DNA of 64,000 nucleotides. Source: Podarcis melisellensis (lineage: Eukaryota). Within the stretch, counting starts at the first letter, position 1. Each line of letters begins with the position of its first letter. The position numbers and the translations under genes were made by a program. Of this stretch, positions 36,117 through 64,000 are shown in pieces. The stretch lies in the NCBI GenBank assembly GCA_964234715.1, contig OZ174284.1, one strand, 5' to 3'. The notes beneath the pieces were generated by a model. It was given only the letters and a program-made list of their open reading frames with translations. It did no database searches and was not told the origin of the DNA.

Positions 36117-37199
36117 CTGTAACTTAGCTGTAAATCATTTTGGCACATTTATTTTAGTAGTGATACATAAATTCAGCATATGTAACCTAACCTATATAAG
36201 CTTGCCTTCCTTATGGTCCTTAAATCTTAAAGACAGGCCATATAGTTGAGGAAGTATGCCGGTCTTCCCCAACTGGGCGTCCCCCATGTGATGTTGGACT
36301 AACATGCTAAACAGGCTTAGACATAGGAGCCAACTCCTAGGGGCCCTTGGGGTCTTCAGCCTCCCAATAAAATATTTGAGGGGGCCGCCCCCCCCCAGTT
36401 GATGGGCATTGTCATTCAAATGGTGTACATACACTGTGTGGTGTGATCAATTATGTGGGGTGGGGCTACACCAAGAGGCAGGAGGCTAACATTGGTTACT
36501 GGCTCCCAGTTCTAATTTTAAATACTGCACAATCGCAGCAACAGACTGAATAAATAACTCTCGTTTATAAATAAAATCAAGGCTACTTCAGCTTCATCCC
36601 TGAGAAAAGGTACATTCAGCAGCGCAGGGGTTCCCAAACTGTGGTCCTGCGTTGTGGGGGGGGGGGTAATATTTTGGGAATCACTGCAGTCGGGTAGGGG
36701 AGGATCTTTGCTGCTCCAGCACAAACGGGCAGCGGCTGTCATACATGCAAGCTGCTTGAAATACAGTGGTACCTCGGTTTAAGAACAGCCATGTTTACGA
36801 ATTATTCAGTATACGATGAATGATTGAAATGTTTACCAATGTCAGGCACCCAAACGGAGCGGATGAGGCGAGGCGCGTTAAAACCATGACTCTCTGACTC
36901 AAAGGCATGCATATCCTTAATTATATTTTTATCCCATGTGCCACGCGGCTTAGGAATGCCTACACCCGCCTTTTATGTCCTTAACAACACCTCCGTGAAG
37001 TGGGTCGGGGCTCAGAGGACGCCTGGCAGAGAATTCCGTCCGCGCCAGCCTTCATAGGCATGAGGAGGAATTGTGAACACGCGGTCCTCCTCCCGGCTCG
37101 TCACACCCAATCCTCAGCCCCACAACTCCGCACTGCCTATAATAAGGCACAGCTCAAGCCGCACGCACAGCCGAGGGTGCCTAGCTAGCTAGCAGGGTT

Positions 37200-38926: not shown

Positions 38927-41062
38927 GTAAGAAGAACTTGGTTTGCCAGCATTATGTTAAGGGGGGGGGTGTTGTTTTGTTTTCTATATATGCATTCACT
39001 TCTATAGTTGTATTTAGTGCCTCAGAAACTCTGTGGGTTGGGTGAGGAAAAGAAGAGTTTCCAGAATTTTAATTCTGATTCTGAATGGTTTCTTGTTTCA
39101 TCATTCGCCACACATTTTACTAAGGAGACCACCAAGACAGTTTGCCTTTTTGTCCAGGGTTCTGCCTCTCTGTACCAGCTTCTGAAGCAGAAACAAAATC
39201 CTCTTAGAGCTGCGTTTTGCATAGGTTTTTTATTATGTAATTAAAAAGAAGGCACACAGGCAAAATGTAGCCAGGGGATCTCATGAGAACACTTATTTCC
39301 TGATGTTAAATACAATTCGTGCAGTCCTGGGTATAGTGGACTATCATCCCTCAGGCTACATCTGCCAGTCTTTCATCATATCTCTCTGTCTGCTCTCTGG
39401 GAACCAGTGTCTTCTGCAAGTCCTCCTGCTCTTAACTCTTCCATGCACCATACCATTCAACTACCCAAGTTGCTTCTGCTCCTTTGATTTACACATCAGT
39501 GCTCTCCATGCTTCCTCTTTTGTTATCCAACTAAACAGTAGCTGATATGGTCCCATTATTGTATCATGTGTGTTAGTAACTAGCTTGAAAACTGTGCTTG
39601 GAACTGAAAAAATAGGTGGTAGTCCTTGCGTGTATGCTTGATCCTTTATTTACTACAAATGTTTTGAGAAATGTGCTACTAAGCCATTTGCAAACTGGAA
39701 TTCTCCCAATCTCTTTATGGATAGGTTTGTTAACCTTAATAATGAGTAAATATAGCAGAGGGGCTTACTCTTTTGAGTAAAAATGCCTAGAATCATGCAT
39801 ATATTTTAAAGCTGGTAGTCTGAAGTTTTTGTTGAAAATTAAAATAGGTAATATAGTCAAGGCAATAGTTCCTGTGTTGTTTATGTAGTGTTTTCTTGTT
39901 CTTCTGGGAGTTCTCCATATTCCTTGAGACTCTTGAGAGGCTTAATTTAAGACACAGTACATTTAAGTGGATTCCCTTGAGTTTCCATCTTGAACTTATT
40001 GGATATGAAAAGTGAAGTTTGTGTAAATGTTCAGGAACATTTAGAAAAGTTCTTAACGTCTGGGTTCCTGACGAAGGATTCCGTGGCTTTGGTCTTTACA
40101 AATGTAATTGTTGAAGGATCATGGCTGTAATTAACAAACCCACAAAACTTGCCTATCACACACCAGAGCAAAGTGCAGTCCTAATTTGTTTAATACATCT
40201 TTGCCTGCTTTCTTTACTGTCTTAGATCATAGACTGTTGTATTGGTTACCGTGAGCATGTGAAATGGATCAAAGCAGATCTTCCTTGCCTATTTAAAAAG
40301 TGGCACTGTCTGTTGTTAACCTTTAGGGGAAAGGACAAGGTGCCCTTCATTCCTCCAGAGCAATTATGGATGAACAAATGTCATTTGGCTGTGGAGAGAT
40401 CATTTCATGGTAAATGTCTGAGGATTGCTCATTTCCAGATGCCAGTCATAATTACAGATTGAGCTTGTTGGGATACCACATATAGCTTGTTCATGTGATT
40501 GAAACCAGCATGACCTACTTGGCTTTGTTCAGACAATAGTTGATGTTTGAATCTTACAGGAGTGTCATGCTCTTTCAACACAGAGAGGTATCTGCCACTG
40601 TGAAATCAAGAATTTTACCAGTTTTTCAAAAGTGTAGAAATCATTGTACTGTAATTCTTCTGTTTTGGATGTAGTCTCTATCAGGGCCCAGTCAGGTTTA
40701 GTGTTGTGAAAGTTTATTCTTCTCACTCTTTGAAACTTTGCTGTCTTTTATTGTAGGTTCTATAATGGTTTATTGTAATCTTCTATATGTTAGCAATGAC
40801 TTTCATTTTCTTTTTTGAGGGATACAAAACCGGTGACAGAAAAACAATAGGTTTACTTTGAGAACACTTAATGGACTTCCCCACTCTCTGTCCATCCCAG
40901 CACCTATCTCTTCCTACAAATGTACAGACAGAGTAGTGGACTTAATTTATTAACCTTTTTGTCCATCTTCAGCTATCTTTCCCCCAAATGGTCAGCCTTG
41001 CTTCATCATCCACTTGGGACCAATGCTATCTTCATGTTTCTACAATGTGTTTTCATGTTCAG

Positions 41063-41191
41063 GTTGTCTCCCAACACCATGGTGACACCCCACAAGAAAA
41101 GCATGCTGGGAAACGGGAACTATGATGTGAACGTCATCATGGCAGCTCTTCAGACCAAAGGTTATGAAGCAGTTTGGTGGGATAAGCGCAG
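41063..41191 (+). CDS. JOSD1: JOSD1 coding exon 2 ([12 protein letters not shown]...WWDKRR)
   Basis: gttcag| ... |gtaaa. Confidence 0.96.
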
Positions 41192-41311
41192 GTAAAGAGA
41201 ACCAGACTATCAAGAGAGACTTGCCATCATTGGAACTGGCTTCTTCCTAGTTGGGTTTATAAATAACTGTAAGAGCCTAACAGTTTCTTTCTTCTATTAT
41301 TCTCTGTTCAG

Positions 41312-45743: not shown

Positions 45744-46689
45744 TAATAGATTTCTATTTTCATATAAGTGGAAAAGACTGCCCTGATAAAATTAAGTGAA
45801 TGAAGTGTAAAGTACTTGAAAACACAGTATTTGTTACATCTGTCATGGTACCATGGTGGTGGTCATTCAGGCAGTGTGAGAAGTGTCAGGTATTTTGTAA
45901 TTCTAATATTTCAATATTTCCCCCTCCCCCCCCCCCCCGGTCAGGTGACCAAAGATGTTCTCTTATATCAATGGTGACATTTCTGATATGCAGCTTTAAA
46001 AAGTCTAACTTTTGCAGCCATAGTAAAGGAAGAAAACTAACCAGTCATAAATTCATGCCAATAAGAAAAGTAGGGCATGTGTTATTTGTAAATAAAGGAA
46101 CACATTGTTACTAATAAGGCCAGTCAAATGTCATCACTCAGAAGTTTTGCTGTGAGTGGACACAACCATCAGCCGACGTGCTTCTGAAGTCACAAAATAG
46201 TCAATACTCCAGCCAAATCTGGGAATGTGGTGTTTTGTACTCTTTCAGCTGGTTCGGTGCAATTATGGGAAGTACAAAAGCTAGAATTAACATAGAAAGG
46301 AAGAGACTATGCAGAAATCTACCCCATCTTGGGGTGACTGGAAAGTGTTAGGATGATGGAATGCCTGTAAAAGACACTGCGGGAAGTGATTCATCAGGAG
46401 AAAAAAAGTGAAAGAGGTCATGCGGTAAATGAGGGGGGCTATTAATTCATCATATAGGAAAGGTATATGCTACATGAGCAAATGTGCACAAAAAGATATA
46501 GATGAAGAACAGAATCAAATACAGTGAAACTGATCCACTAGATGCTTTGAGACAGGTAATTCTGCAAAGATTCAGGAATTAAATGTACTGCGTGGTGGAG
46601 GAAGATTCACAGATAAAAGGAGGAACATTCTGAAAAGGATAAGAATCACAGACTTAATAGGCCAAAAAATGCGGTAATTCAGTTCTCAC

Positions 46690-46807
46690 CTGTCGCTGTT
46701 GCATCTGCTGTTGCTGCTCCATTTGCAGTTTCTCAGTTTCAAAAACAACAGGAAGAACTAGGATCATGAAGGAAGTGGTCCCAATCCACAAAGCTGCCCT
46801 GGAGAAT
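46690..46807 (-). CDS. TOMM22: TOMM22 exon 3 (FSRAALWIGTTSF...QQRQ)
   Basis: aaaaaag| atypical acceptor ... |gtgag. Confidence 0.94.
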
Positions 46808-48835
46808 CTTTTTTGGGGGGTAGGAGGAGGGGACAGAAGGTAATCAGTAAAGCTAATGTTTCCAACTTCACTACAATGGAAATGACTTATCCTAAAGATC
46901 TCACTGTTAGATTGCATTAGACTATTATTCCAGTTTCAGTACAATCCTATTCATATATACTCCAAGATAAGCTCCACTTATCTAAACTTATAGGACTTAC
47001 TCCCTAGTAAACGGTTATGGGATTGCAGCCTTAAATCCCCTTCCTATGGCAACATTAGTGTGTGTGAACCTTATAACATGTCTCATCACAATCATATTTT
47101 TGCTTCCAAATATAAATACACTCCCTATAAATATCCATCACAATCTGAAATACCTCCAAGTTTTCTCCCTTAAAACTACCAAGATTCCATTAAAAGACTA
47201 AATGCATAAATAGTGTATAAAGTTTTGTTTTATACCATAATGAAGTTTCCTTAAAGATCATAGGCAACCTGAGTGAAATCCAACATCACACAAACAGCCT
47301 TCTACTCATGTGATGCAGCTTTCTGTCATCCACAGCACACTTTAGATCCCAAATCTGTTCTGAAAAGCTCCCCAACCCTCCAGAGCAAACTTGAGCATGC
47401 AGAGACTACAACAGGAATGGGAAATCCTCTTCTGCTCACAGAAGTTTGTTCATGAGTGGACATAACTGGATATCGCTTCAAAAGAAAAACCTTTCCTCCT
47501 CAACTCACTAAGAATGTGTGTTTTTTTGGGGGGGGAGTTAAATACATGGATTGATCTTTGTGGGAACATTAGGATACTGTGTCATGCAAGCTTAGAAATT
47601 AAACAAAAGAAAGCTATGCTTTCCAATCCTCACAAAATTTGAAACACCTGGAAGAGCAACATTTTAATTTTAATCATTAGCAGCCAAAAGCGGTTAGTTA
47701 TATATACCTATCTCAGGATAATGCTTCATACATCTGACAAAATGAACTTTAGTCCCTGAAAGTTTTGGCTATAAAAAGCTTGTTATTTTTTAAAGCATCA
47801 TAGGATTCTTTGTTTTTGCTGCAAAGACTTACAAGGATATTCCTCTGGAAATTATTTTACTCGAGGTCTTAAAAGAATATAATTATATTTCAAGCAAATC
47901 ACTGATTCACAATCTTTTATTAGCAATAATTTTGGTTTCTTCTGAATGGAAACTTCTTAGTATGTATTCTATTTCAGAATGATTAAGAAAATATGATCAT
48001 GACTACATTAAAAAAGAGCAAAATGAGAATATAAATTCTATTTAACAGGGTTATTTTGTGTCCACAACCTGAGAAATTTATATTTATATTTGATGACAAA
48101 TTGTTTGGTGTAGTACAGCCTTGCATTTATTATTCATGTCTATATGGAGTATGTGTGTGTAATACGAGAGTTTAAAGAGCGAACAAAAGGGAAATTACCA
48201 TTTCATGGAATAAAGGGCCCAAGCCATTTGACTACAAGGTCTCTGTTTAGTTGAACTACTATAACTGAATTATGAGTGCTATATTTCTGAGCATACTCAA
48301 AACAGTTCTCTAGAACTTCATTCTCACAAGTAAATATAGAACCCCTTTTCTCTCCAACTACAGATATCACAATTATCTCAATTATTTATGATCAATTCCA
48401 TGTCAATGGCTCCTTGCAGGCAAAGGGTATTTTTTTATATTTAATTTACATTCATTTCTCAGCCTTTTCTTCATTAAAGCTTGAATATGCATGGTACATT
48501 CTCAACTGCTTGACCATCATTATCCAAACAGCGTACAACGGATCATTTCTATCCGCACACTAAAAACACACACATCTAGAGTTCTGAATTAAGAAGTCTA
48601 AGTATTCTCAATGGCTGTCTGCCCAACTTAAGAAACGCAAAACACCACCAACTCCCTAACAATTCTCCATCCCCTTGGTGGCTGAAGGAGCCAGCCACTT
48701 CACTGAGAAGGGCTACCTTAACCACCCACAAACCACAAGTCTTGTGAGGCATAGCTAAGTGGCCACCTGCCCATGGTATCTGAGGACCAGGGACCAAGGG
48801 GCTTGGGTCCTCACCTCCCATTTCCCCCTCCTCAC

Positions 48836-49045: not shown

Positions 49046-49446
49046 TTAGAATGTTCAGTTCACACTGAGTTCAGGACAACATTGTCCTTTGACCTGTTCT
49101 TATATGCATAGTTGATCACATCTACGGAACATGCTTGTTATGCTCTTTTAAGTTTCCTATATCAAACATTAGTAATTGTTTTAAGTCTTACTATATTAAT
49201 CATTGGTTATAATTTAATTAGGAGGTTCTCATGCTTGTCTAGTTCTGTGCTCCCTTTCCCAGCCCTTGATCTGGGTGATTAATGCCTATACGCAACCCTT
49301 TGCTTTGTACTTGTGTTGACCAATCAGCAATAAGCACATATGTGGCAATGTTGTAATAATCAATAAAAGAGGCTCCTTGGGACTTGCTCGAGGAGATGCC
49401 TCCCAGATGACACCTACTACTCGTCTGTCGTTATTTCAACCCAACA
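49046..49446 (+). mobile_element. Candidate solo LTR in TOMM22 intron 1
   Basis: AT-rich ~400-bp insert flanked by direct repeat (A)GAGCCC(T) at 49039-49046 and 49446-49453; CCAAT at 49320, AATAAAA at 49362; ends ...CA. Confidence 0.6.
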
Positions 49447-49479
49447 GAGCCCTGCTGAATGGGAACAAAGGCCGATCTA

Positions 49480-50200
49480 GTCCGGAGCTTCGTTCTCAGC
49501 AGCGGCCAGCCAGATGCCTATTATTATTATTATTACCCGGGGAGCCCTCCTGCAAAGAGAAACCTCAGCAGGCACCAATCCACGCTCCCAGCAGCACCGC
49601 CCCTCCGTCGAGCCCCCTCCCCCTCCCGGCTCGCGCAAGGCCCCCTCCAGAAAACACACAGAGGAGACGCTTCCCGCGCTGCTCCTCCTCCTCCTCCTCC
49701 CGCGTCTCCTGGCCGGGCCTTCAGCTCACTCGAGCTCCCCGCCTGGGCCCAAGGCAGGGCCGACTCCAGAGAGGGGTCACCTCGCACATGGCCGCCCGGC
49801 CAAGCTCCGGCAGGGCCTGGCTTTACCTCGTCGTCGTCGTCCTCCACCTCCTCTTCCAGCTCTTCGGCCTTGCCCGCCGCGGACTTGGGCAGCAGCAGGT
49901 CCTCCGGGGAAAGGGGCATCGCAGCGGCCATGACTGCAACGAGGGGAGGGCAGGCAACGACGAGGCAGGCTGCCGGCAGCGGAGAGCGAACGTCGCCGGA
50001 AGCGGAAGGAGAGGGAGAGCGGAAGCGCGTGGGCTGTGCTCTGCCGCTGCGCAGCGACACCCAGCGGACGGGAGGAAGAGGTTGAAAAGGCAACGGGGGG
50101 CTCGCTCGTTGTCGCGCAAAGGCAGCTCCTTCTTCTCTGAGCTGAATTGTATTTATTTGTGGGATGTTGCAGTGTATCCTCGCCTTACGGCCAGAGTGGT
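49480..50200 (-). promoter_or_regulatory. TOMM22 CpG-island promoter with tandem ETS/GABP sites
   Basis: CCGGAAGCGGAAG at 49996-50008 and another CGGAAG at about 50020; GABP/NRF-2 sites are typical of nuclear-encoded mitochondrial genes. Confidence 0.75.
49827..49931 (-). CDS. TOMM22: TOMM22 exon 1 (MAAAMPLSPEDLLLPK...EDDDDE)
   Basis: gtcATGg start, |gtaaa donor. Confidence 0.92.
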
Positions 50201-50942
50201 TCTGCTTATGGTGCTGGTCAGCCAGCCCACGCCCCCTCGGCAGGAAATTTTAAGGCAGGGACATTGTCAGATGTGGTGGCCCCCTCCAGATGTTGATGCA
50301 CTACAAATCCCATCATCCCTGACTATGGGCCTGTGTTGGCTGGGGCTGAGTCCAGCAACATCTGGAGGCCACCTCAATGGCCGCCTCTGCAACAAGATGC
50401 GAAGAGATCTGGAAGGGGATTTCCCTCTTTCCGACAGTCCGACTCCATCTCTCTTTCATTTTTCCAATGACATTCAGGATCCCGTGCTCAGTCTTCTTGG
50501 GCAGATGTGTTTGTTTTTCTGACCTCTGAGGCTCTGGTGCTTTTTAAGTTGAAGAGCTCCCGTCCGCCCACCAGCAAAGCAGGCCCTTTTATTCAGGCAC
50601 AGAGAGAACACAAAATTCCAGAAGGCAAACGAAGATTTATTCTAAAGAGAGTAAATTCTGAAGAATGGGGCTTTGCATTTCCAAAGGGGTAAATAATATG
50701 GTAGGCAAACGTGTGTGTGTGCATGTAAATATATATAGCATCCATGTTTTCAGGGTGCTTTTTAAAAATTATTATTATTTATATAGGATTAATACTTTTC
50801 TGAGGAGTTAATCTTGAGGAGGGCCAGATTTCTCTTGAACTTGGACGATGTCCCTTAAAACGCCACCCAGAGTAGAGTAATGGGCTATGTAATAAAACAA
50901 ATACACAAGTCAACACTGCAGCAATAGAAACACTGTAATGAC

Positions 50943-56599: not shown

Positions 56600-57600
56600 T
56601 CTGCATCCCATTGTTCAGAGGGCAGATCGAGACCGCAGCAAATAAAGCAACGGGGGAGGGGGAGGGAGTCGAGAGTCGCTGCCGCCCTAAACCCGCCAAA
56701 TGCCTTCACCCCAGCATCGCGCACCGACAACCGTGGAGCTCCTCACCCAACAGATGCACAACACACCTCCGCACCCTGGTTGTAGCCACCGAGATCAATT
56801 GCGCATGCGCACTCTTTGATGCTTCGCGACTTGCGGTAGCCGAGAAACGCACAGCGGGCGGAACCACCCCAGGAAAGAAATCGAAAATTCCACAGGACAG
56901 AGGAGGGGGCACACGCATTTCATTTTAAATACATAGAGTGGCGGATTTTTTTTAAAAAATGGCTCAAAATAAGTAAAATGCCTGCGTCTGGAGGAAGCTT
57001 GTGAGAATATCAGAAAATGCACCCCTTCTCTTTTCGTATCATGGTTGTATCCCAAACCGCCGGGAAACGCGGAGCAAACGGCAGCCTCGCGGATGGGACC
57101 GTACCATTGTTTATAAAAGGCGGGGGGGAAGAGAAAATAGTTTTGGTCGAGTTCTAAAATTACGTTAACAGTGTTATCCCTCGGGAACAGAGCTCGTGAG
57201 TGAATTGCATCTCACACGCAGATTCGCCAGTCGTAGTCGGCATCTAATGCTACCTTTTAGAGACGCATAAAGGTTCAAGAAATAAATGGTTTGCTCCGAG
57301 TAGTTGCCACGGTGACGGAAGAACGCTCAGGGAGGAGGACATAAAAGGGCCCGTTGTGGGCGTGGTCGGCAGAGAATCAGGGGTGATTGGAGGGGCAAGG
57401 AGCGTTTCTGATATTGGTCCTCTTGGGGTCCGGAAGAAAGAAACAGGGTCCCACAGCTGCGTGGGCAAGGAGGCGCCTCTTCCCGCCCTTTCACTCCGGT
57501 GCGTATGGGCGCCCCTGTGTTACTTTGAAGCTATGTAACACCCGAATAAGTTGGGAACGTCGTTTTTTCACGTCGACCATCAACGTCTTTTTTTCTGATG
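56600..57600. promoter_or_regulatory. Divergent CBY1/FAM227A CpG-island promoter
   Basis: CpG-rich; perfect NRF1 palindrome TGCGCATGCGCA at 56800-56811; RFX X-box-like GTTGCCACGGTGAC at 57303-57316; ETS CCGGAAG at about 57430. Confidence 0.75.
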
Positions 57601-58974
57601 AGCCTCTATAAGCTTCCCAAAGGAAAGGCGGGGAAGATCATCATACATGGACTATTATTGTTCACTTTGTTGCTCTCATTTTGCTGGCATTTTCTTCACA
57701 GTCTTAATCTGGCGACCAGTCTGGGAGATCTGCATCGGCAAAGCTCTGCATGCCTGGTGGACAGTTCTTCCCTTAATTCAGCCTGGGCCATATCAACACC
57801 CATGACTGTGAAAAGTGGTCTTGTGCTTTAAATGCCTGGTGCAGATGTGGTGTAAACTGGTAGTTTTCTTATCGACAGTTTTATGTTGCTACTGATTAAT
57901 TTTGAAATAGTCGGACATTTCCTTGTAGGAAAAGTTCTCCCAAGCCCTTGGTTATTTTGTCTGCCCCTTTCCCAGTTCTACATTGTTCTTTTTGAGATGG
58001 GGCAATCAATTTTATACCATGCAGTAGCTGCAGCATTGGCATATATAGAAGGTCATTAAGGTATTTCAGTTTCATGTTTTAATTTCCTGGTGATCACCAT
58101 CATGGAATTTACAGTTTGTTTTTCTAAGAGTGTGCAGAAGTGATTAAAACATAACAAACCTCTTCCTCTCACCCTATCCTGACCCATTTCACCTTTGGAT
58201 AAACATGCACAGGATCGGGCTGCACATTGATATACAAAGCACTCCAGTACTGGACACGTTTTCTTGGAAATAAAGTTGCCAAATTGTGTAGAGAATACAC
58301 CTGTGCAATGTAATGATACTTTTAGGCTGATTAGAATTTGCACATTTTTACTCAGAAGGAAGTGTATGTAATGTAGCCTCAGAATGCTAAAATACACATT
58401 TTTTTATATTTGAAAAAATTATAATCAAAGGTAATACAAATTTATGTGTCTCTTCACAGTTTGAATGAAAAAGTAACACTAGCAAGAAAACTAATGTGTG
58501 TGACAGAACAAGAAACAAAATTCTGGTAGCTTCATAAAATCGTGATACTTTGCTATTCCTCCGTGCAGTGGAGAACAATGTAGTTGTGATTTTCAGGCTT
58601 GAAATTTCTTCTGGGAATACCTAACTACAGCTAGAATTCCAAATTGCTGCCTCTGAGTTGGCAGCTGTAATTACTACAAATTAAGGAAGACAAATTAGAA
58701 TAATTTTCCCCATGGGACCCTTTCTTACTAAGCTATATTTGGTGGAGAGGAGTGGGGCAGAAGTGTTATATTTATAAAGTAACCCTTTTGGTATCCACAT
58801 GAGGAACCCTAAAATAGCACTCTAGGTTAAATCAGCTCAAGCCAATAATTGGAAAAGTTAATTTAAGTGTGATCATGCTTTGGGAACAAAATAGCAAGCA
58901 AGTTTGTGGGGAAATGTGTGTTTAATATAAATGTGTTGTCTCCACTTTATTTTTTAGGATTTAGTAATTTCAAG

Positions 58975-59095
58975 ATGCAATTTGTAACTATTAAATCATT
59001 TGTGAGCCCTTTAAAGGGATTCTTGATATTGCCATCAGCAACCCAAGACAAAAAAAGAGACGCCGTCACTTGCACATTAGATGACAAACCACGAT
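58975..59095 (+). CDS. FAM227A: FAM227A first coding exon (MQFVTIKSF...LDDKPR; acceptor at 58958)
   Basis: tttttag| acceptor, aagATG start, U12-type donor |GTATCCTTT. Confidence 0.75.
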
Positions 59096-59715
59096 GTATC
59101 CTTTGTTCCTATAGTTAACAATGTATGTGTAAATAAATATATAGCTTGTTTCATATATATCTGTTTTACTTTTGCTTTAAAGTGTTTGGGTAATACTTAT
59201 TTGGTACTTGAACCTCATTTTTTTGAGGTTTGGAGAAATCTTGAGTCATCATTGGGGTTGCCATATTTCAAAGAGTAAAATTCCTGACACCCACAAAGTT
59301 GTGGAACTTTTTTTGGAGAACAAACCTACATTGTTGAGCTTTTTTGGGGAAACCTAAACCAAAAACAGTTATTTTAAGCTTTTTGAGCTGTTTCCATTGC
59401 TTTTTCCATCATGTTGCCATACATCTGGGTTTTCCCTGACATTCAACAAAATTCACCTCCGACGCCATTTTTACACCCTAAAAACCAGGACATGTCAGGA
59501 ATTTTCCTGATGTATGACAAACTTGTTCATCATCCCCAAACCTAGATACTTTGTCATGAAAAAAAAGAAATATAATTGCATTCAGTCTTACATGATAGTT
59601 GTGTGAGTTGAAATAAGGAAATACTATTATTTGTCTTGCATCTAGTGGGGCAGCAAGCAGCATGTGGTCAAAATCAGGCAGTCAGTTGAACACTTGTTGA
59701 CTCAGCATACACATA

Positions 59716-60072
59716 AAAAGGTAAAGGTACCCCTGCCTGTACGGGCCAGTCTTGACAGACTCTAGGGTTGTGCGCTCATCTCACTCTATAGGCTGGGAGC
59801 CAGCGCTGTCCACAGACACTTCCAGGTCATGTGGCCAACGTGACAAGCTGCATCTGGCGAGCCAGCACAGCACACGGAATGCCATTTACCTTCCCACTGG
59901 TAAGCGGTCCCTATTTATCTACTTGCACCCGGGGGTGCTTTCGAACTGCTAGGTTGGCAGGCGCTGGGACCGAACGACGGGAGCGCACCCCGCCGCGGGG
60001 ATTCAAACCGCCGACCATGCGATCAGCAGGTCCTAGGCGCTGAGGTTTTACCCACAGCGCCACCCACGTTCC
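59716..60072 (-). mobile_element. Sauria SINE
   Basis: Near-copy of 35761-36116; flanking catacaca repeat (59706 and 60078) is a probable TSD. Confidence 0.92.
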
Positions 60073-60248
60073 GCCAACATACACAAAACACATTGCTTAA
60101 AAAGTTGGGCTCCACCTTCACACTCTGCCGAGCAGTAGCAACATTCCTTTAGAAGACATCTGAAGGTAGCCCTGTATAGGGAAGTTTATTAATATTTCAT
60201 GTTCTGTTATGTTTTTATATATGCTGGAAGCCCCAAGAGTGGCTGGTT

Positions 60249-60889
60249 TGTGGGGGGGCTAGATTTCCCTAAATTCCGGTGTGCCAGATCCTCCCAATAA
60301 TTCCTGGATGTAGTAAAAGTCAGAATTAATCAAGATTTGATTAAATTTTGCCAAACATAGAAATCTCCTGGATTTAGCTATGCTAAGGAGCCAAGCCAGC
60401 TTTGCAGAGCTAGCTAGATGGGCCATTAGCAGAGGACACAGACCAGTCATGGACCATCAAGGAAACAATCAGAGGTCAAGACTGCCAGGCAAGGAGGAGT
60501 GGGTATTCTTTGTTGAGTGCTAGTGGGCTAGAATTAGGGTTTCAACTTTGAATGATGTAGACTGTGGGGAGGTCCTTTGAGTCAATTAGCAGCAAGAAGG
60601 AGAAGGAGGGGCAGAACTCCATGTGAGTTGGGGATAACAAGCTGGAACTAAGAATCACAGAAGGTGGCTGTCCTTTGAAACTAATGCTGCACTTAAGGGG
60701 GAAGTCAGACCCTCATAGGATGTGAATGCCCTGCAATCGCTCCATCTAGGTCCAGGTTGTATATGTGTAAGAAAACCATATATCATAAAGACACCACAGT
60801 CTCTGTTGTGCCTCAAAAGGCAATACAGACCCTAGTCTGCAACCCCTGGAATTTCATACCATTCAGGGAGATCGGGGTGGTGTATAGCA
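60249..60889 (+). mobile_element. Candidate solo LTR interrupting an L2-like tail
   Basis: TG...CA bounded ~640-bp block that splits the ggaagcccc..gagtggctgg / tataaaataaat L2-type 3' end; TSD imperfect. Confidence 0.45.
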
Positions 60890-61009
60890 GTTTATAAAAT
60901 AAATATAGCATTTAAGTGATGGCATTAGGAGGTTTAACAAAAAGGAGGAGGAAGAATTTTGCATATGCTTTGAAGGTTTTCAAAATGTTCCTTAACAAAT
61001 ATCTGGTAG

Positions 61010-61095
61010 TGTACGTCATTGGCAGCATAGGACAAGTGAACCAGAAAATTTCTCACTTAGAACTGGGTCTGAAAAGATATGACAGTAGTGAAGGA
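61010..61095 (+). CDS. FAM227A: FAM227A coding exon 2 (LYVIGSIGQVNQKISHLELGLKRYDSSEG)
   Basis: U12 acceptor, |gtgagt donor. Confidence 0.85.
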
Positions 61096-61639
61096 GTGAG
61101 TAAAGAAATCTTATCAGCACTTTATACAAGAAATCCCACTGTGTTTTTCTGATGCTATTTCTAAATAATAGATGCTTGGTCAAAGTATATATCTTAGCCT
61201 TTTGGATGACAAACTGAAAATCAGTTGTTGCTGCTGCTGTTGTTTTTTTAAAGCGGAGTTGAAGTCCTAGATCAGCACTAATATAACTGTGTTGAACCAG
61301 AGAATAGGAGACATCAGGTACAATGATGCTATCGCACCAGCTAGGTCTAAATGTTGCAAGTTTTTGAATCCTCATATTTTTCATGCACATATATTTATTG
61401 ACAAGATCTTCTAGTTGTCAAATATTTTATTTTACTCACATTTCTAATCCTAATTTCAAATACATTTCTTAGGTTCCTGAAGAATGTTCAGGTTTTAACT
61501 GAAACTCAGTGTTAAAAGAATTACAAGATAGTGAGGGAATCAATAATGCCTCTCTTATTGAATACAAAGAAGGTAAATTCCAGGACCTTGTAGGAAGTTA
61601 GTGCCTAACCACCATTTTCCATTATTTTTCTCATTGAAG

Positions 61640-61709
61640 GTGATTGGGGAAATGGGGCTCAAGAGACGCAAGACATCCAGAAAAGTATCGAGATCAGTTA
61701 GGGCAAAAG
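61640..61709 (+). CDS. FAM227A: FAM227A coding exon 3 (VIGEMGLKRRKTSRKVSRSVRAK)
   Basis: ttgaag| ... |gtatg; phase-compatible, low sequence similarity. Confidence 0.6.
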
Positions 61710-62677
61710 GTATGCATTAATACTACCAAATATGAAATGGAGGCTCTAACCCCTTAAAAATGATGTTATTGTTAGAACATATTTATTCGAGTAAATTAGT
61801 ATTTTGTCCTGTAGTTCAGACATGCCAAACCATGATTTGTGCTCCACACTGCCATCACCATTTTATTCTCTCTTTGTGTCCCAAAATACTGAACAACTTG
61901 AGACTGTGAGAATAATCTGGTTATAGAGGAAAAAATTATCAGTGAGCGTTAGCCTGAATTTGTAAAGGGTTTTTTCCCCTGATGTCCAGGGACAGACATG
62001 GATAAGATTTAGTAATAACAAAAACAGGTCATGAGATGTCATGAGTCGCAACAATTAGGTTTCCCAGTGCAGAGTTGCAGTAGAATCAGTAGAGCATCTT
62101 AGCCAGTCAAAGTACATTTAAGAAAGTAACTGTGTTCCTGGCATGGACTGAGCTTAGATATATTGGAAAATACAAAAGAAGGTGCTGAATTTAATTAGGG
62201 AAGAGGATGCTTACTGGAGGGAAGCTATTACTTGCAGAGGATAATTTATGGTCAAATCAGGGCTTTGAACTAGGCACTGGGGATTTCATTAAGCAAATAC
62301 AAGCATAATACTGGTCACTGCAGGGAAATTCCCCTTTATGGTAGGCCGCTTGGGGAACTTTGGTGGGAAGCTTTGGGAGCCCCGCTCAATAAATGATAAT
62401 TAATTCAATTTGAGTTTTCTCTGATTACTTATGTTAGTGTTATGCTCTTTGCTCAGAGCAAAACCCTAGCGAATATACTTAGTCTCAAGGCCTGTTTAGA
62501 GTTCCAGTTTAACCAAGCATTGGTTCAGCATGCTGTCCACTATACCACTCTGGCTCCTGGTCATCTGTATGGGCTCACTTCGTTCTGGGGTGGCCACAGT
62601 ACCCACACAAACCACTGACAAATAACAAACCTCCCTTTGCTTGGAATCCATTTGCTACCTACTATAGTCCCATTGGC

Positions 62678-62768
62678 CGGCTCCCTCGACTAATAAAGCG
62701 GGATGAGTGCCGCAACCCCAGAGTCGGTCACAACTGGACCTAATGGTCAGGGGTCCCTTTACCTTTTA
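62678..62768 (+). mobile_element. Sauria SINE 3' fragment
   Basis: gccgcaaccccagagtcggtcacaactggacctaatggtcaggggtccctttaccttt. Confidence 0.75.
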
Positions 62769-62982
62769 TAGTACCATTAAAAACTGGCACAGGCATGTGG
62801 TGGAGTGCAGTGGAAAGGGGAAAATATGCTACTTCATTTTTCTGGTGGAGCAAAAATATTTGCAAACCACAACCCCAAATCCAGTGCTCTTATTTAACCA
62901 ATTCATGCGAAAAGGTTGTCCATTTTGTCCTAAAATGCTCTTCAGATGCTAAGGGTGGCCATTTTTTTTCCTTATGCTGTAG

Positions 62983-63047
62983 AGAGAGACCAGAAGGTGA
63001 CACAGAAGTTTGGGAAGCATGCTACAGAGAAAATAGCTCAGAAAAAG
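62983..63047 (+). CDS. FAM227A: FAM227A coding exon 4 (ERDQKVTQKFGKHATEKIAQKK)
   Basis: ctgtag| ... aag|gtatg; phase 1 to 0. Confidence 0.6.
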
Positions 63048-63533
63048 GTATGATGGCATGTGAGGGATCAGGAGTCATTGATTCCTGTGCATATTAGAAA
63101 GATGCAGAATCCTAGATGTGACACAAGTGCCTAGGAAGGTCTCATGATGAATCAGATAGTTGGTCTTTTTAATCCATTATACACTCCTATAATAATTGTT
63201 TCATTTATATAACACTAGTCGTTAGTATTTGTACAGTACAGTGCTTTTGAATGTTCAAAGGTTTTTTTCCACATCCTTTTACTCGCCACAGTCCTGAAAA
63301 CAAGCTAAGATATTATTAGTACCTAATTCTAGAGGGAGAGCTAAGGTTGAATATGGCACTAGATTTGTTAATAGTTAACCATTGCTGTGTATGAAGGTGA
63401 TTTTTGTCAGGACTCTGGTGAGTCCCAGAAACTGTGGAATGTCAACAGACTGTCCTTAGAGTGCTCACTGGGTTGAATTTTGGGCTGAGTGTCTTCTTGA
63501 TTTCTCATGTATTATTTTTTTTCTAACCCCTAG

Positions 63534-63680
63534 ATGGTAACAGAAAAGGATAAACTTGTGGAATTATATCAATACCCAGGATACTGTAAGGAGAAACCTA
63601 CACCATTGCCAAATGGAATAGAGCTGAGAGAAATTTTGGAGAAGGTGATTCGTGCCCAGGGTAAAACACCAGTTGGTAAG
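63534..63680 (+). CDS. FAM227A: FAM227A coding exon 5 (MVTEKDKLVELYQYPGY...KTPVGK)
   Basis: ccctag| ... aag|gtacg; clear FAM227 similarity. Confidence 0.85.
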
Positions 63681-64000
63681 GTACGCTGCATATCTCAAAC
63701 ATTCAGAAGCTGATAGCAGGCTGGACGAGGGAGGTAGTAGGGGTGAATTGATAATGTAGGGCCATACATACTTTTTTGATGTGTATTTATGTGGCGCAAG
63801 ATAGTATAGCTGGGGCAGTGTCAGCACCAGGTACCTTCAGGCAGTTGCTAGGGCCACAACATCCTGGCAGGGGTCACATCTGATGACTTCCCTCGCCCTC
63901 CCCTTTGTTGGTTTTCCTGGTCTATCACTCTAAACAGCCCCAGGTGGCTCAACCTAGCATCACCCTTGCGGCATTGTAGGCAGTTAAAACAGTGGTTAGC

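What the first reader, a model, noticed from the sequence alone, without database searches (positions are those of the whole stretch)
59096..61009. Perfect-consensus minor-spliceosome (U12) intron hidden in FAM227A
Seen: the donor is T|GTATCCTTT, a 9/9 match to the U12 GT-AG 5' consensus. The branch site TTCCTTAAC (60988-60996) is also a 9/9 match. The first downstream AG is at 61008-61009, and there is no polypyrimidine tract. Splicing joins ...DDKPR-L-YVIGSIGQVNQK in frame (phase 1), which aligns to recalled human ...ENNPP-S-CLIGSMHQVNQK. Established: these are the defining signals of U11/U12-dependent introns, which are rare, phase-1 biased and often rate-limiting for expression; minor-spliceosome defects have been linked to ciliary phenotypes. 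Inference: this poorly characterised gene is throttled by the minor spliceosome at its first coding intron. U2-trained gene finders may mis-annotate it.
Basis: partly seen in the sequence, partly recalled or inferred. Interest (0 to 1): 0.8.

Follow-up and report, generated by a model that had tools for sequence, protein, structure and literature searches.

The report
Known, conserved U12 intron in FAM227A
The first coding intron of this lizard's FAM227A gene is a genuine minor-spliceosome (U12-type) intron, but the same intron is conserved from ray-finned fishes to mammals and is already listed for human and mouse in the Minor Intron Database, so it is an ordinary, known feature.

Summary
GTATCCTTT sits at 59096-59104, directly after an ATG-started 40-codon exon. 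TTCCTTAAC sits at 60988-60996. The first AG after it is 61008-61009, 14 nt past the branch A. Pyrimidine content before the acceptor is 0.55, against 0.80 in the four neighbouring introns.

Assembled contigs from two related organisms in two studies carry exactly the joint 59095^61010, together with the three downstream U2 joints.

The gene is FAM227A. Its 49-aa exon is 83% identical to Pogona "protein FAM227A". Josephin-like and Tom22-like ORFs lie upstream, as expected from synteny.

In eight other vertebrates the intron at this position and phase 1 also carries U12 signals: Pogona, cobra, alligator, platypus, opossum, goat, bowfin and paddlefish.

The intron is not hidden. MIDB (Olthof 2019) lists two minor introns each in human FAM227A and mouse Fam227a. 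The human 5'ss 12-mer in MIDB is identical to the goat orthologue of this intron. NCBI lizard gene models already splice it correctly. "Throttling" of expression was not testable here, and the contigs gave no intron-specific retention signal.

Verdict: real, well supported, already known, low interest.

The parts
57358..57498 (+). Non-coding first exon (5' UTR) of FAM227A. The start is approximate.
   Evidence: The X3 spliced contig has 141 further letters before 58957. Their 3' end matches 57479-57497 exactly. A GT donor follows at 57499.
57499..58957 (+). U2-type GT-AG intron in the 5' UTR
   Evidence: Pyrimidine fraction before the AG is 0.80.
58958..59095 (+). First coding exon: ATG at 58975, 40 codons plus 1 base
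   Evidence: Translation. It is 26/40 identical to the Pogona FAM227A N-terminus. Contig pieces end at 59095.
59096..61009 (+). U12-type GT-AG intron, 1914 nt, phase 1
   Evidence: The joint 59095^61010 is present in contigs of X3 and X6. The signals are shown. The orthologous introns are U12-like in 8 species.
59096..59104 (+). U12 5' splice site GTATCCTTT
   Evidence: It is the only exact copy in the window.
60988..60996 (+). U12 branch-point sequence TTCCTTAAC. The branch A at 60995 lies 14 nt before the intron's last base.
61008..61009 (+). 3' splice-site AG, the first AG after the branch site, with no polypyrimidine tract
61010..61095 (+). Second coding exon (TG, then 28 codons)
   Evidence: Translation. 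It is 22/28 identical to Pogona. Contig pieces cover 61010-61095.
61640..61709 (+). Third coding exon, flanked by U2-type GT-AG introns 61096-61639 and 61710-62982
   Evidence: Joints; splice signals
62983..63047 (+). Fourth coding exon
   Evidence: Joints; splice signals
63534..63680 (+). Fifth coding exon (49 codons), where the FWWh domain begins. The gene runs on past the end of the window.
   Evidence: Joint. Weak Pfam PF14922 match. It is 83% identical to Pogona FAM227A.
59716..60187 (.). Interspersed SINE-like repeat inside the U12 intron. It is not part of the splicing signals.
   Evidence: Very high summed contig depth. An inverted partial copy lies at 62713-62767. No Rfam match.

Best explanation
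Window 59096-61009 is the first coding intron of the FAM227A orthologue of a squamate reptile, and it is a U12-type (minor-spliceosome) GT-AG intron. From the established mechanism, U11 snRNP should pair with the 5' splice site GTATCCTTT. U12 snRNP should pair with TTCCTTAAC, bulging the branch adenosine 14 nt before the 3' AG, with no help from a polypyrimidine tract. Splicing joins T to TG to make a Leu codon (phase 1). The intron is ancient: it keeps its position, phase and U12 signals across bony vertebrates. It is one of two minor introns of this gene that are already catalogued in mammals. The second is an AT-AC intron near the 3' end, beyond this window. The sequence signals, the splice junction and the conservation are shown here. 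Actual dependence on U11/U12/U6atac is inferred.
For: The signals are at the stated coordinates. There is no pyrimidine tract: 0.55 against 0.80 in four neighbouring introns. The exact joint 59095^61010 (GT..AG, skipping 1914) appears in a 1116-nt multi-exon contig of X3 (organism B, study P2) and a 342-nt contig of X6 (organism A, study P4). Both also carry the downstream joints. Gene identity rests on the exon-5 peptide, which hits proteins named FAM227A in Pogona (83%), Eublepharis, Anolis, Naja, platypus, Amia, Polypterus and Polyodon. There are also Josephin-like and Tom22-like ORFs upstream. The orthologous phase-1 intron carries [G/A]TATC/T(C/T)TT plus a (T)YCYTTAAC box 9-18 nt from the AG in Pogona, Naja, Alligator, platypus, Monodelphis, Capra, Amia and Polyodon. 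Only one other intron in each gene looks U12-like. MIDB Table S1 lists two minor introns each in human FAM227A and mouse Fam227a. Table S2 marks the gene as a MIG in both species.
Against: No experiment here shows minor-spliceosome dependence. The runs laid are only guessed to be RNA and are from related organisms, not necessarily this species. Contigs cannot show how efficient splicing is. That the 5'-proximal MIDB introns (human 4381 nt, mouse 805 nt) are orthologous to this one is inferred. The inference rests on their position and on the identity of the human 5'ss 12-mer with goat, not on an alignment of human or mouse DNA.
Confidence: 0.94

Rival explanations
1. The intron is removed by the major (U2-type) spliceosome and only resembles a U12 intron by chance.
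For: The termini are GT-AG, which the major spliceosome also uses. Each 9-mer alone occurs about 0.76 times by chance in the window.
Against: Both motifs sit at the ends of the same confirmed intron, with the correct branch-to-AG spacing and no pyrimidine tract. The same signals persist in 8 distant orthologues whose intron sequence and length otherwise differ, from 236 to 2101 nt. The alligator copy is AT-AG, which the major spliceosome does not handle. MIDB classes the human and mouse gene as minor-intron-containing.
Confidence: 0.02
2. The joined form comes from a processed (retro-copied) pseudogene in DNA, or from a mis-assembly, not from mRNA of this locus.
For: The library type of the runs is not on record ('RNA?' is a guess). 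Contigs alone cannot tell mRNA from a retro-copy.
Against: Two organisms in two studies show the same joints. The X3 contig spans the 5' UTR exon and at least five coding exons. Its word depth is 192 in a run of only 76 million letters, which fits a transcriptome. NCBI protein models of several lizards carry the same junction peptide.
Confidence: 0.02
3. Beyond being a U12 intron, it acts as a rate-limiting, regulated step that throttles FAM227A output. It adds to the best explanation and does not exclude it.
For: General knowledge holds that some minor introns are spliced slowly and retained. The gene keeps two minor introns over more than 400 million years, which could reflect selection. MIDB Table S7 has an alternative-splicing entry for the other human FAM227A minor intron.
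Against: Nothing measured here supports it. In X3 only the spliced form was assembled. In X1 unspliced contigs cover all introns at similar low depth, not this one in particular. Conservation of minor introns is the rule and needs no regulatory role.
Confidence: 0.15

Closest known systems
Minor introns of human FAM227A and mouse Fam227a in the Minor Intron Database (Olthof et al. 2019, PMC6717393, Tables S1 and S2)
   Same: It is the same gene. The 5'-proximal minor intron has a GT-AG 5'ss of the form GTATCCTT and a TTTCCTTA(A/G)C branch box. The human 12-mer CCTGTATCCTTC equals the goat orthologue of the intron studied here.
   Different: This is a different species (a squamate), and its signals match the consensus even more closely (9/9 and 9/9). 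Intron length is 1914 nt, against 4381 nt in human and 805 nt in mouse for the 5'-proximal entries.
Canonical U12-type GT-AG introns (U11/U12-dependent class)
   Same: It has the 5'ss /GTATCCTTT, the branch site TTCCTTAAC 14 nt from the 3' AG, no polypyrimidine tract, phase 1, and deep positional conservation.
   Different: Nothing differs in sequence. Dependence on the minor spliceosome was not assayed.
Second, AT-AC minor intron of FAM227A (and the AT-AC minor intron that MIDB lists in human FAM227B)
   Same: It is in the same gene family and is also U12-type and conserved: Pogona, alligator, platypus, opossum, goat and paddlefish.
   Different: It has AT-AC termini, is phase 2, lies near the 3' end (…EI.K.I^P…), and is outside this window.

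Membership tests
U12-type (minor-spliceosome) intron | 5' splice site matching /[AG]TATCCTT | tested here: met
   GTATCCTTT at 59096-59104
U12-type (minor-spliceosome) intron | Branch-point sequence TCCTTAAC-like, about 10-20 nt upstream of the 3' splice site | tested here: met
   TTCCTTAAC at 60988-60996, with the branch A 14 nt before the last intron base. The distance range is from my own knowledge of the literature.
U12-type (minor-spliceosome) intron | No polypyrimidine tract between the branch site and the 3' splice site | tested here: met
   Pyrimidine fraction 0.55, against 0.80 in four neighbouring U2-type introns
U12-type (minor-spliceosome) intron | The predicted boundaries are the ones actually used | tested here: met
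   Joint 59095^61010 in contigs of two runs, two organisms and two studies. Caveat: these are contigs of relatives, and the library type is only a guess.
U12-type (minor-spliceosome) intron | Conservation of the U12 signals at the orthologous position | tested here: met
   8 of 8 orthologues from fish to mammals
U12-type (minor-spliceosome) intron | Splicing depends on U11, U12, U4atac and U6atac snRNPs | not testable with these tools
   This needs knock-down or suppressor-snRNA experiments.
FAM227A (FWWh-domain protein family) | Sequence orthology to proteins named FAM227A | tested here: met
   Exon 5 (49 aa): E 6.6e-17 and 83% identity to Pogona FAM227A. All named hits are FAM227A or FAM227A-like. 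Exons 1 and 2 are 26/40 and 22/28 identical to Pogona.
FAM227A (FWWh-domain protein family) | FWWh domain (Pfam PF14922) | tested here: inconclusive
   Only the first 23 profile positions lie in the window (E 0.093, below the cut-off). The orthologues' full products carry PF14922.
FAM227A (FWWh-domain protein family) | Conserved neighbourhood (JOSD1 - TOMM22 - CBY1 - FAM227A, human order recalled from memory) | tested here: inconclusive
   Single-exon ORFs give sub-threshold Josephin (40920-41192 +, E 0.0014) and Tom22 (46657-46917 -, E 0.002) matches, in the expected order. CBY1 was not looked for.

The most novel reading that the evidence does not exclude
FAM227A is one of the few genes that have kept two minor introns since before the split of ray-finned fishes and tetrapods: a GT-AG intron at the first coding junction and an AT-AC intron near the 3' end. 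If both are slow, regulated steps, output of this testis- and ciliated-tissue gene would be doubly gated by minor-spliceosome activity. That would give a concrete target linking minor-spliceosome defects to ciliary phenotypes.
Probability: 0.1. Interest if true: 0.4.

Novelty: already known. Interest (0 to 1): 0.12.

Why it matters
It matters little beyond correct annotation. The intron is a textbook U12-type intron in a gene already listed as minor-intron-containing in human and mouse. The work here adds three modest points. The intron, and a second AT-AC one, are conserved at the same positions from paddlefish and bowfin to mammals. The alligator copy has switched to the rare AT-AG subtype. 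Current evidence-based gene models already handle the junction.

Tried and rejected
- **Pfam on single exons:** Only a weak match to the start of FWWh in exon 5. A first try failed on a one-base coordinate slip, which I corrected.
- **Paper search:** 'FAM227A' together with 'minor intron' in main texts found 0 papers. The listing is only in the MIDB supplementary tables. PMC7507305 holds no supplements as text.
- **Earlier findings:** Nothing lies near this place. They were not used here.
- **The look-up of encoding contigs:** Nothing was on record for P0012, P0011, P0041 and P0125. These may not be the longest product of their gene, which is the only one kept on record. As a result no rodent locus could be read, and the mouse 805-nt intron could not be matched directly.
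- **Rfam on 57000-64000:** No family matched.
- **Spliced model:** It was searched exon by exon, by reference.
- **Human sequence:** No human contig or human sequence was fetched or compared. What is said of human comes from the tables of PMC6717393.
- **Chance alone:** Rejected. Each 9-mer is common enough by itself, but not the pair at a confirmed junction that is conserved in 8 species.

Full report
**Observation.** Reading 58900-61200 shows the claimed letters at the claimed places.
- T|GTATCCTTT sits at 59095|59096-59104.
- TTCCTTAAC sits at 60988-60996.
- The next AG is at 61008-61009, with no AG in between.

The exon before the donor opens with ATG at 58975 and reads 40 codons ending in DDKPR, plus one base, T. 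The exon after the acceptor gives TG and then YVIGSIGQVNQKISHLELGLKRYDSSEG. The split codon is therefore Leu and the intron is phase 1.

Each 9-mer by itself is not remarkable. About 0.76 chance copies are expected in the window on both strands, and 1 and 3 are observed. What counts is their placement.

Pyrimidine content at -23..-4 is 0.55, against 0.80 for each of the four neighbouring introns. The branch A lies 14 nt from the intron's end.

**Is the junction used?** One look-up of public runs found no run on record as RNA. It did find small runs of two related organisms that hold 6-16% of the sampled words, about the exon share of the stretch. I laid four of them on 58900-63720.
- **X3** (organism B, study P2): a 1116-nt contig.
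- **X6** (organism A, study P4): a 342-nt contig.

Both skip exactly 59096-61009 (GT..AG, 1914 nt). Both also carry the downstream joints 61095^61640, about 61709^62983 and about 63047^63534. X4 (study P3) shows the downstream joints only.

The X3 contig continues 141 letters upstream of 58957. Their end matches 57479-57497, followed by a GT donor. So there is a non-coding first exon, and the U12 intron is the first coding intron.

Caveats apply. These are contigs of relatives, and the library type is a guess. A fourth run, X1, has unspliced contigs over nearly all introns at similar low depth. It therefore says nothing specific about retention of this intron.

**Which gene?** Single exons gave nothing in Pfam except a weak match of exon 5 to the first 23 positions of FWWh, PF14922.

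The word-based protein search only sees proteins of similar length to the query, so a 49-aa exon could not find full-length relatives there. I therefore sent exon 5 (window:63534-63680) to the exhaustive representative search.

The named hits are all FAM227A or FAM227A-like: Pogona vitticeps (83% identity), Eublepharis, Anolis, Ophiophagus/Naja, Gopherus, platypus, Amia, Polypterus and Polyodon. Exons 1 and 2 are 26/40 and 22/28 identical to the Pogona protein.

Upstream single-exon ORFs give sub-threshold Josephin and Tom22 matches. Their order is the one I recall from the human JOSD1-TOMM22-CBY1-FAM227A neighbourhood. The spliced model itself was never joined; each exon was searched by reference.

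**Conservation.** I fetched eight annotated FAM227A loci. With a script, I placed each annotated protein on its own locus, checking only the split codon at each boundary. In every one, the intron between the residues aligned to ...DDKPR and LYVIGS... is phase 1 and U12-like.

| Species | 5' splice site | Branch box |
|---|---|---|
| Pogona | GTATCCTTT | TTCCTTAAC |
| Naja | GTATCCTTT | AACCTTAAC |
| Alligator sinensis | ATATCTTTT (AT-AG intron) | TTCCTTAAC |
| Platypus | GTATCTTTT | CTCTTTAAC |
| Monodelphis | GTATCTTCT | TTCTTTAAC |
| Capra | GTATCCTTC | TTCCTTAAC |
| Amia | GTATCCTTT | TCCCTTAAC |
| Polyodon | GTATTCTTT | ATCCTTAAC |

Intron lengths run from 236 to 2101 nt, and the rest of the intron sequence is unrelated.

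By my simple match counts, only one other intron per gene is U12-like. It is an AT-AC, phase-2 intron near the 3' end (…EI.K.I^P…), seen in Pogona, alligator, platypus, opossum, goat and paddlefish. It lies beyond this window.

**What is known.** The Minor Intron Database paper (Olthof et al. 2019, PMC6717393) lists two minor introns per species in Table S1.

| Species (transcript) | 5'-proximal intron | 3'-part intron |
|---|---|---|
| Human FAM227A (ENST00000355830) | chr22:38645646-38650026, 4381 nt | chr22:38597357-38599763, 2407 nt |
| Mouse Fam227a (ENSMUST00000187519) | chr15:79648832-79649636, 805 nt | chr15:79620856-79623454, 2599 nt |

Table S2 marks the gene as a minor-intron gene in both species.
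- **Human signals:** 5'ss CCTGTATCCTTC and branch box GTTTCCTTAGCA.
- **Mouse signals:** 5'ss CCCATATCCTTG and branch box CTTTCCTTGACA.

The human 5'ss 12-mer is identical to the goat first coding intron, and the human branch 12-mer differs from goat by one base. The mouse pair matches the goat second, AT-AC intron 11/12 and 11/12. So the intron found here is the orthologue of one already catalogued.

NCBI protein models of lizards read straight across the junction, so it is not being mis-annotated. No paper's main text holds both FAM227A and 'minor intron'. The 46 papers that mention the gene are mostly association studies, so "poorly characterised" is fair.

**Mechanism.** Shown: the signals, the junction, and conservation of position, phase and signals. 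Inferred from the established U12 pathway: U11 pairs with the 5'ss, U12 pairs with the branch box, and the nearby AG is chosen by distance, not by a pyrimidine tract. The further idea that the intron throttles expression is untested. The contigs give no intron-specific retention signal.

**Verdict.** This is a real U12-type intron, correctly spotted from sequence alone, but it is already known for this gene and ordinary for its class. Interest is low.

Noticed in passing
L001:16199-16612; L006:28989-30178; L005:23891-26263; L007:25787-27391; L008:36005-37842; L003:20482-20608: FAM227A has a second conserved minor intron. It is AT-AC and phase 2, with ATATCCTT and a TTCCTT(T/G/A)AC-like box 13-14 nt before the AC. 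It lies at …EI.K.I^P… near the 3' end, beyond this window. It matches the second MIDB entries for human and mouse. It also resembles the AT-AC intron that MIDB lists in human FAM227B (ACC|ATATCCTTT), so it may predate the A/B duplication.
   Followed up: partly
L006:1116-2477: In Alligator sinensis the orthologue of the intron studied here has AT-AG termini (caa|ATATCTTTT … TTCCTTAAC … AG). This is a rare U12 subtype, or else a sequence or annotation error in that draft assembly.
   Followed up: no
L004:2638-9266 and L004:17026-22977: The Naja naja model (678 aa) repeats exons 3-7, with introns of identical length (511, 2249, 1303 and 1372 nt) and identical splice-site sequence. This is most likely an assembly duplication, not a real tandem exon duplication.
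   Followed up: no
window 59716-60187 and 62603-62767: There are two copies, in opposite orientation, of an interspersed SINE-like repeat. One is inside the U12 intron and one is in the intron between the third and fourth coding exons. Their arms are 80% complementary over 55 nt. Summed contig depth in the runs is enormous, and there is no Rfam match.
   Followed up: partly
window 40920-41192 (+) and 46657-46917 (-): Single-exon ORFs give sub-threshold Josephin (JOSD1-like) and Tom22 (TOMM22-like) Pfam matches. Their order is the one expected upstream of FAM227A.
   Followed up: partly
window 36911-36996 (+): ATATCCTTA lies 66 nt upstream of GTCCTTAAC, with an AG 16 nt after the branch A, in a G+C-rich promoter-like stretch. 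It would make a U12-like AT-AG mini-intron of about 85 nt. No coding context was seen, so it is probably chance.
   Followed up: no
window 49377-50522 (+): A 381-codon stop-free stretch has long ORFs in other frames and on the other strand as well. The only Pfam match is a weak DUF1180 hit (E 0.0048). It looks like biased or repetitive sequence rather than a gene.
   Followed up: no
PMC6717393 Table S2, Fam227a/FAM227A row: Judged against the goat introns, the row seems to pair the mouse second (AT-AC) intron with the human first (GT-AG) intron. The two columns would then not be orthologous introns.
   Followed up: partly
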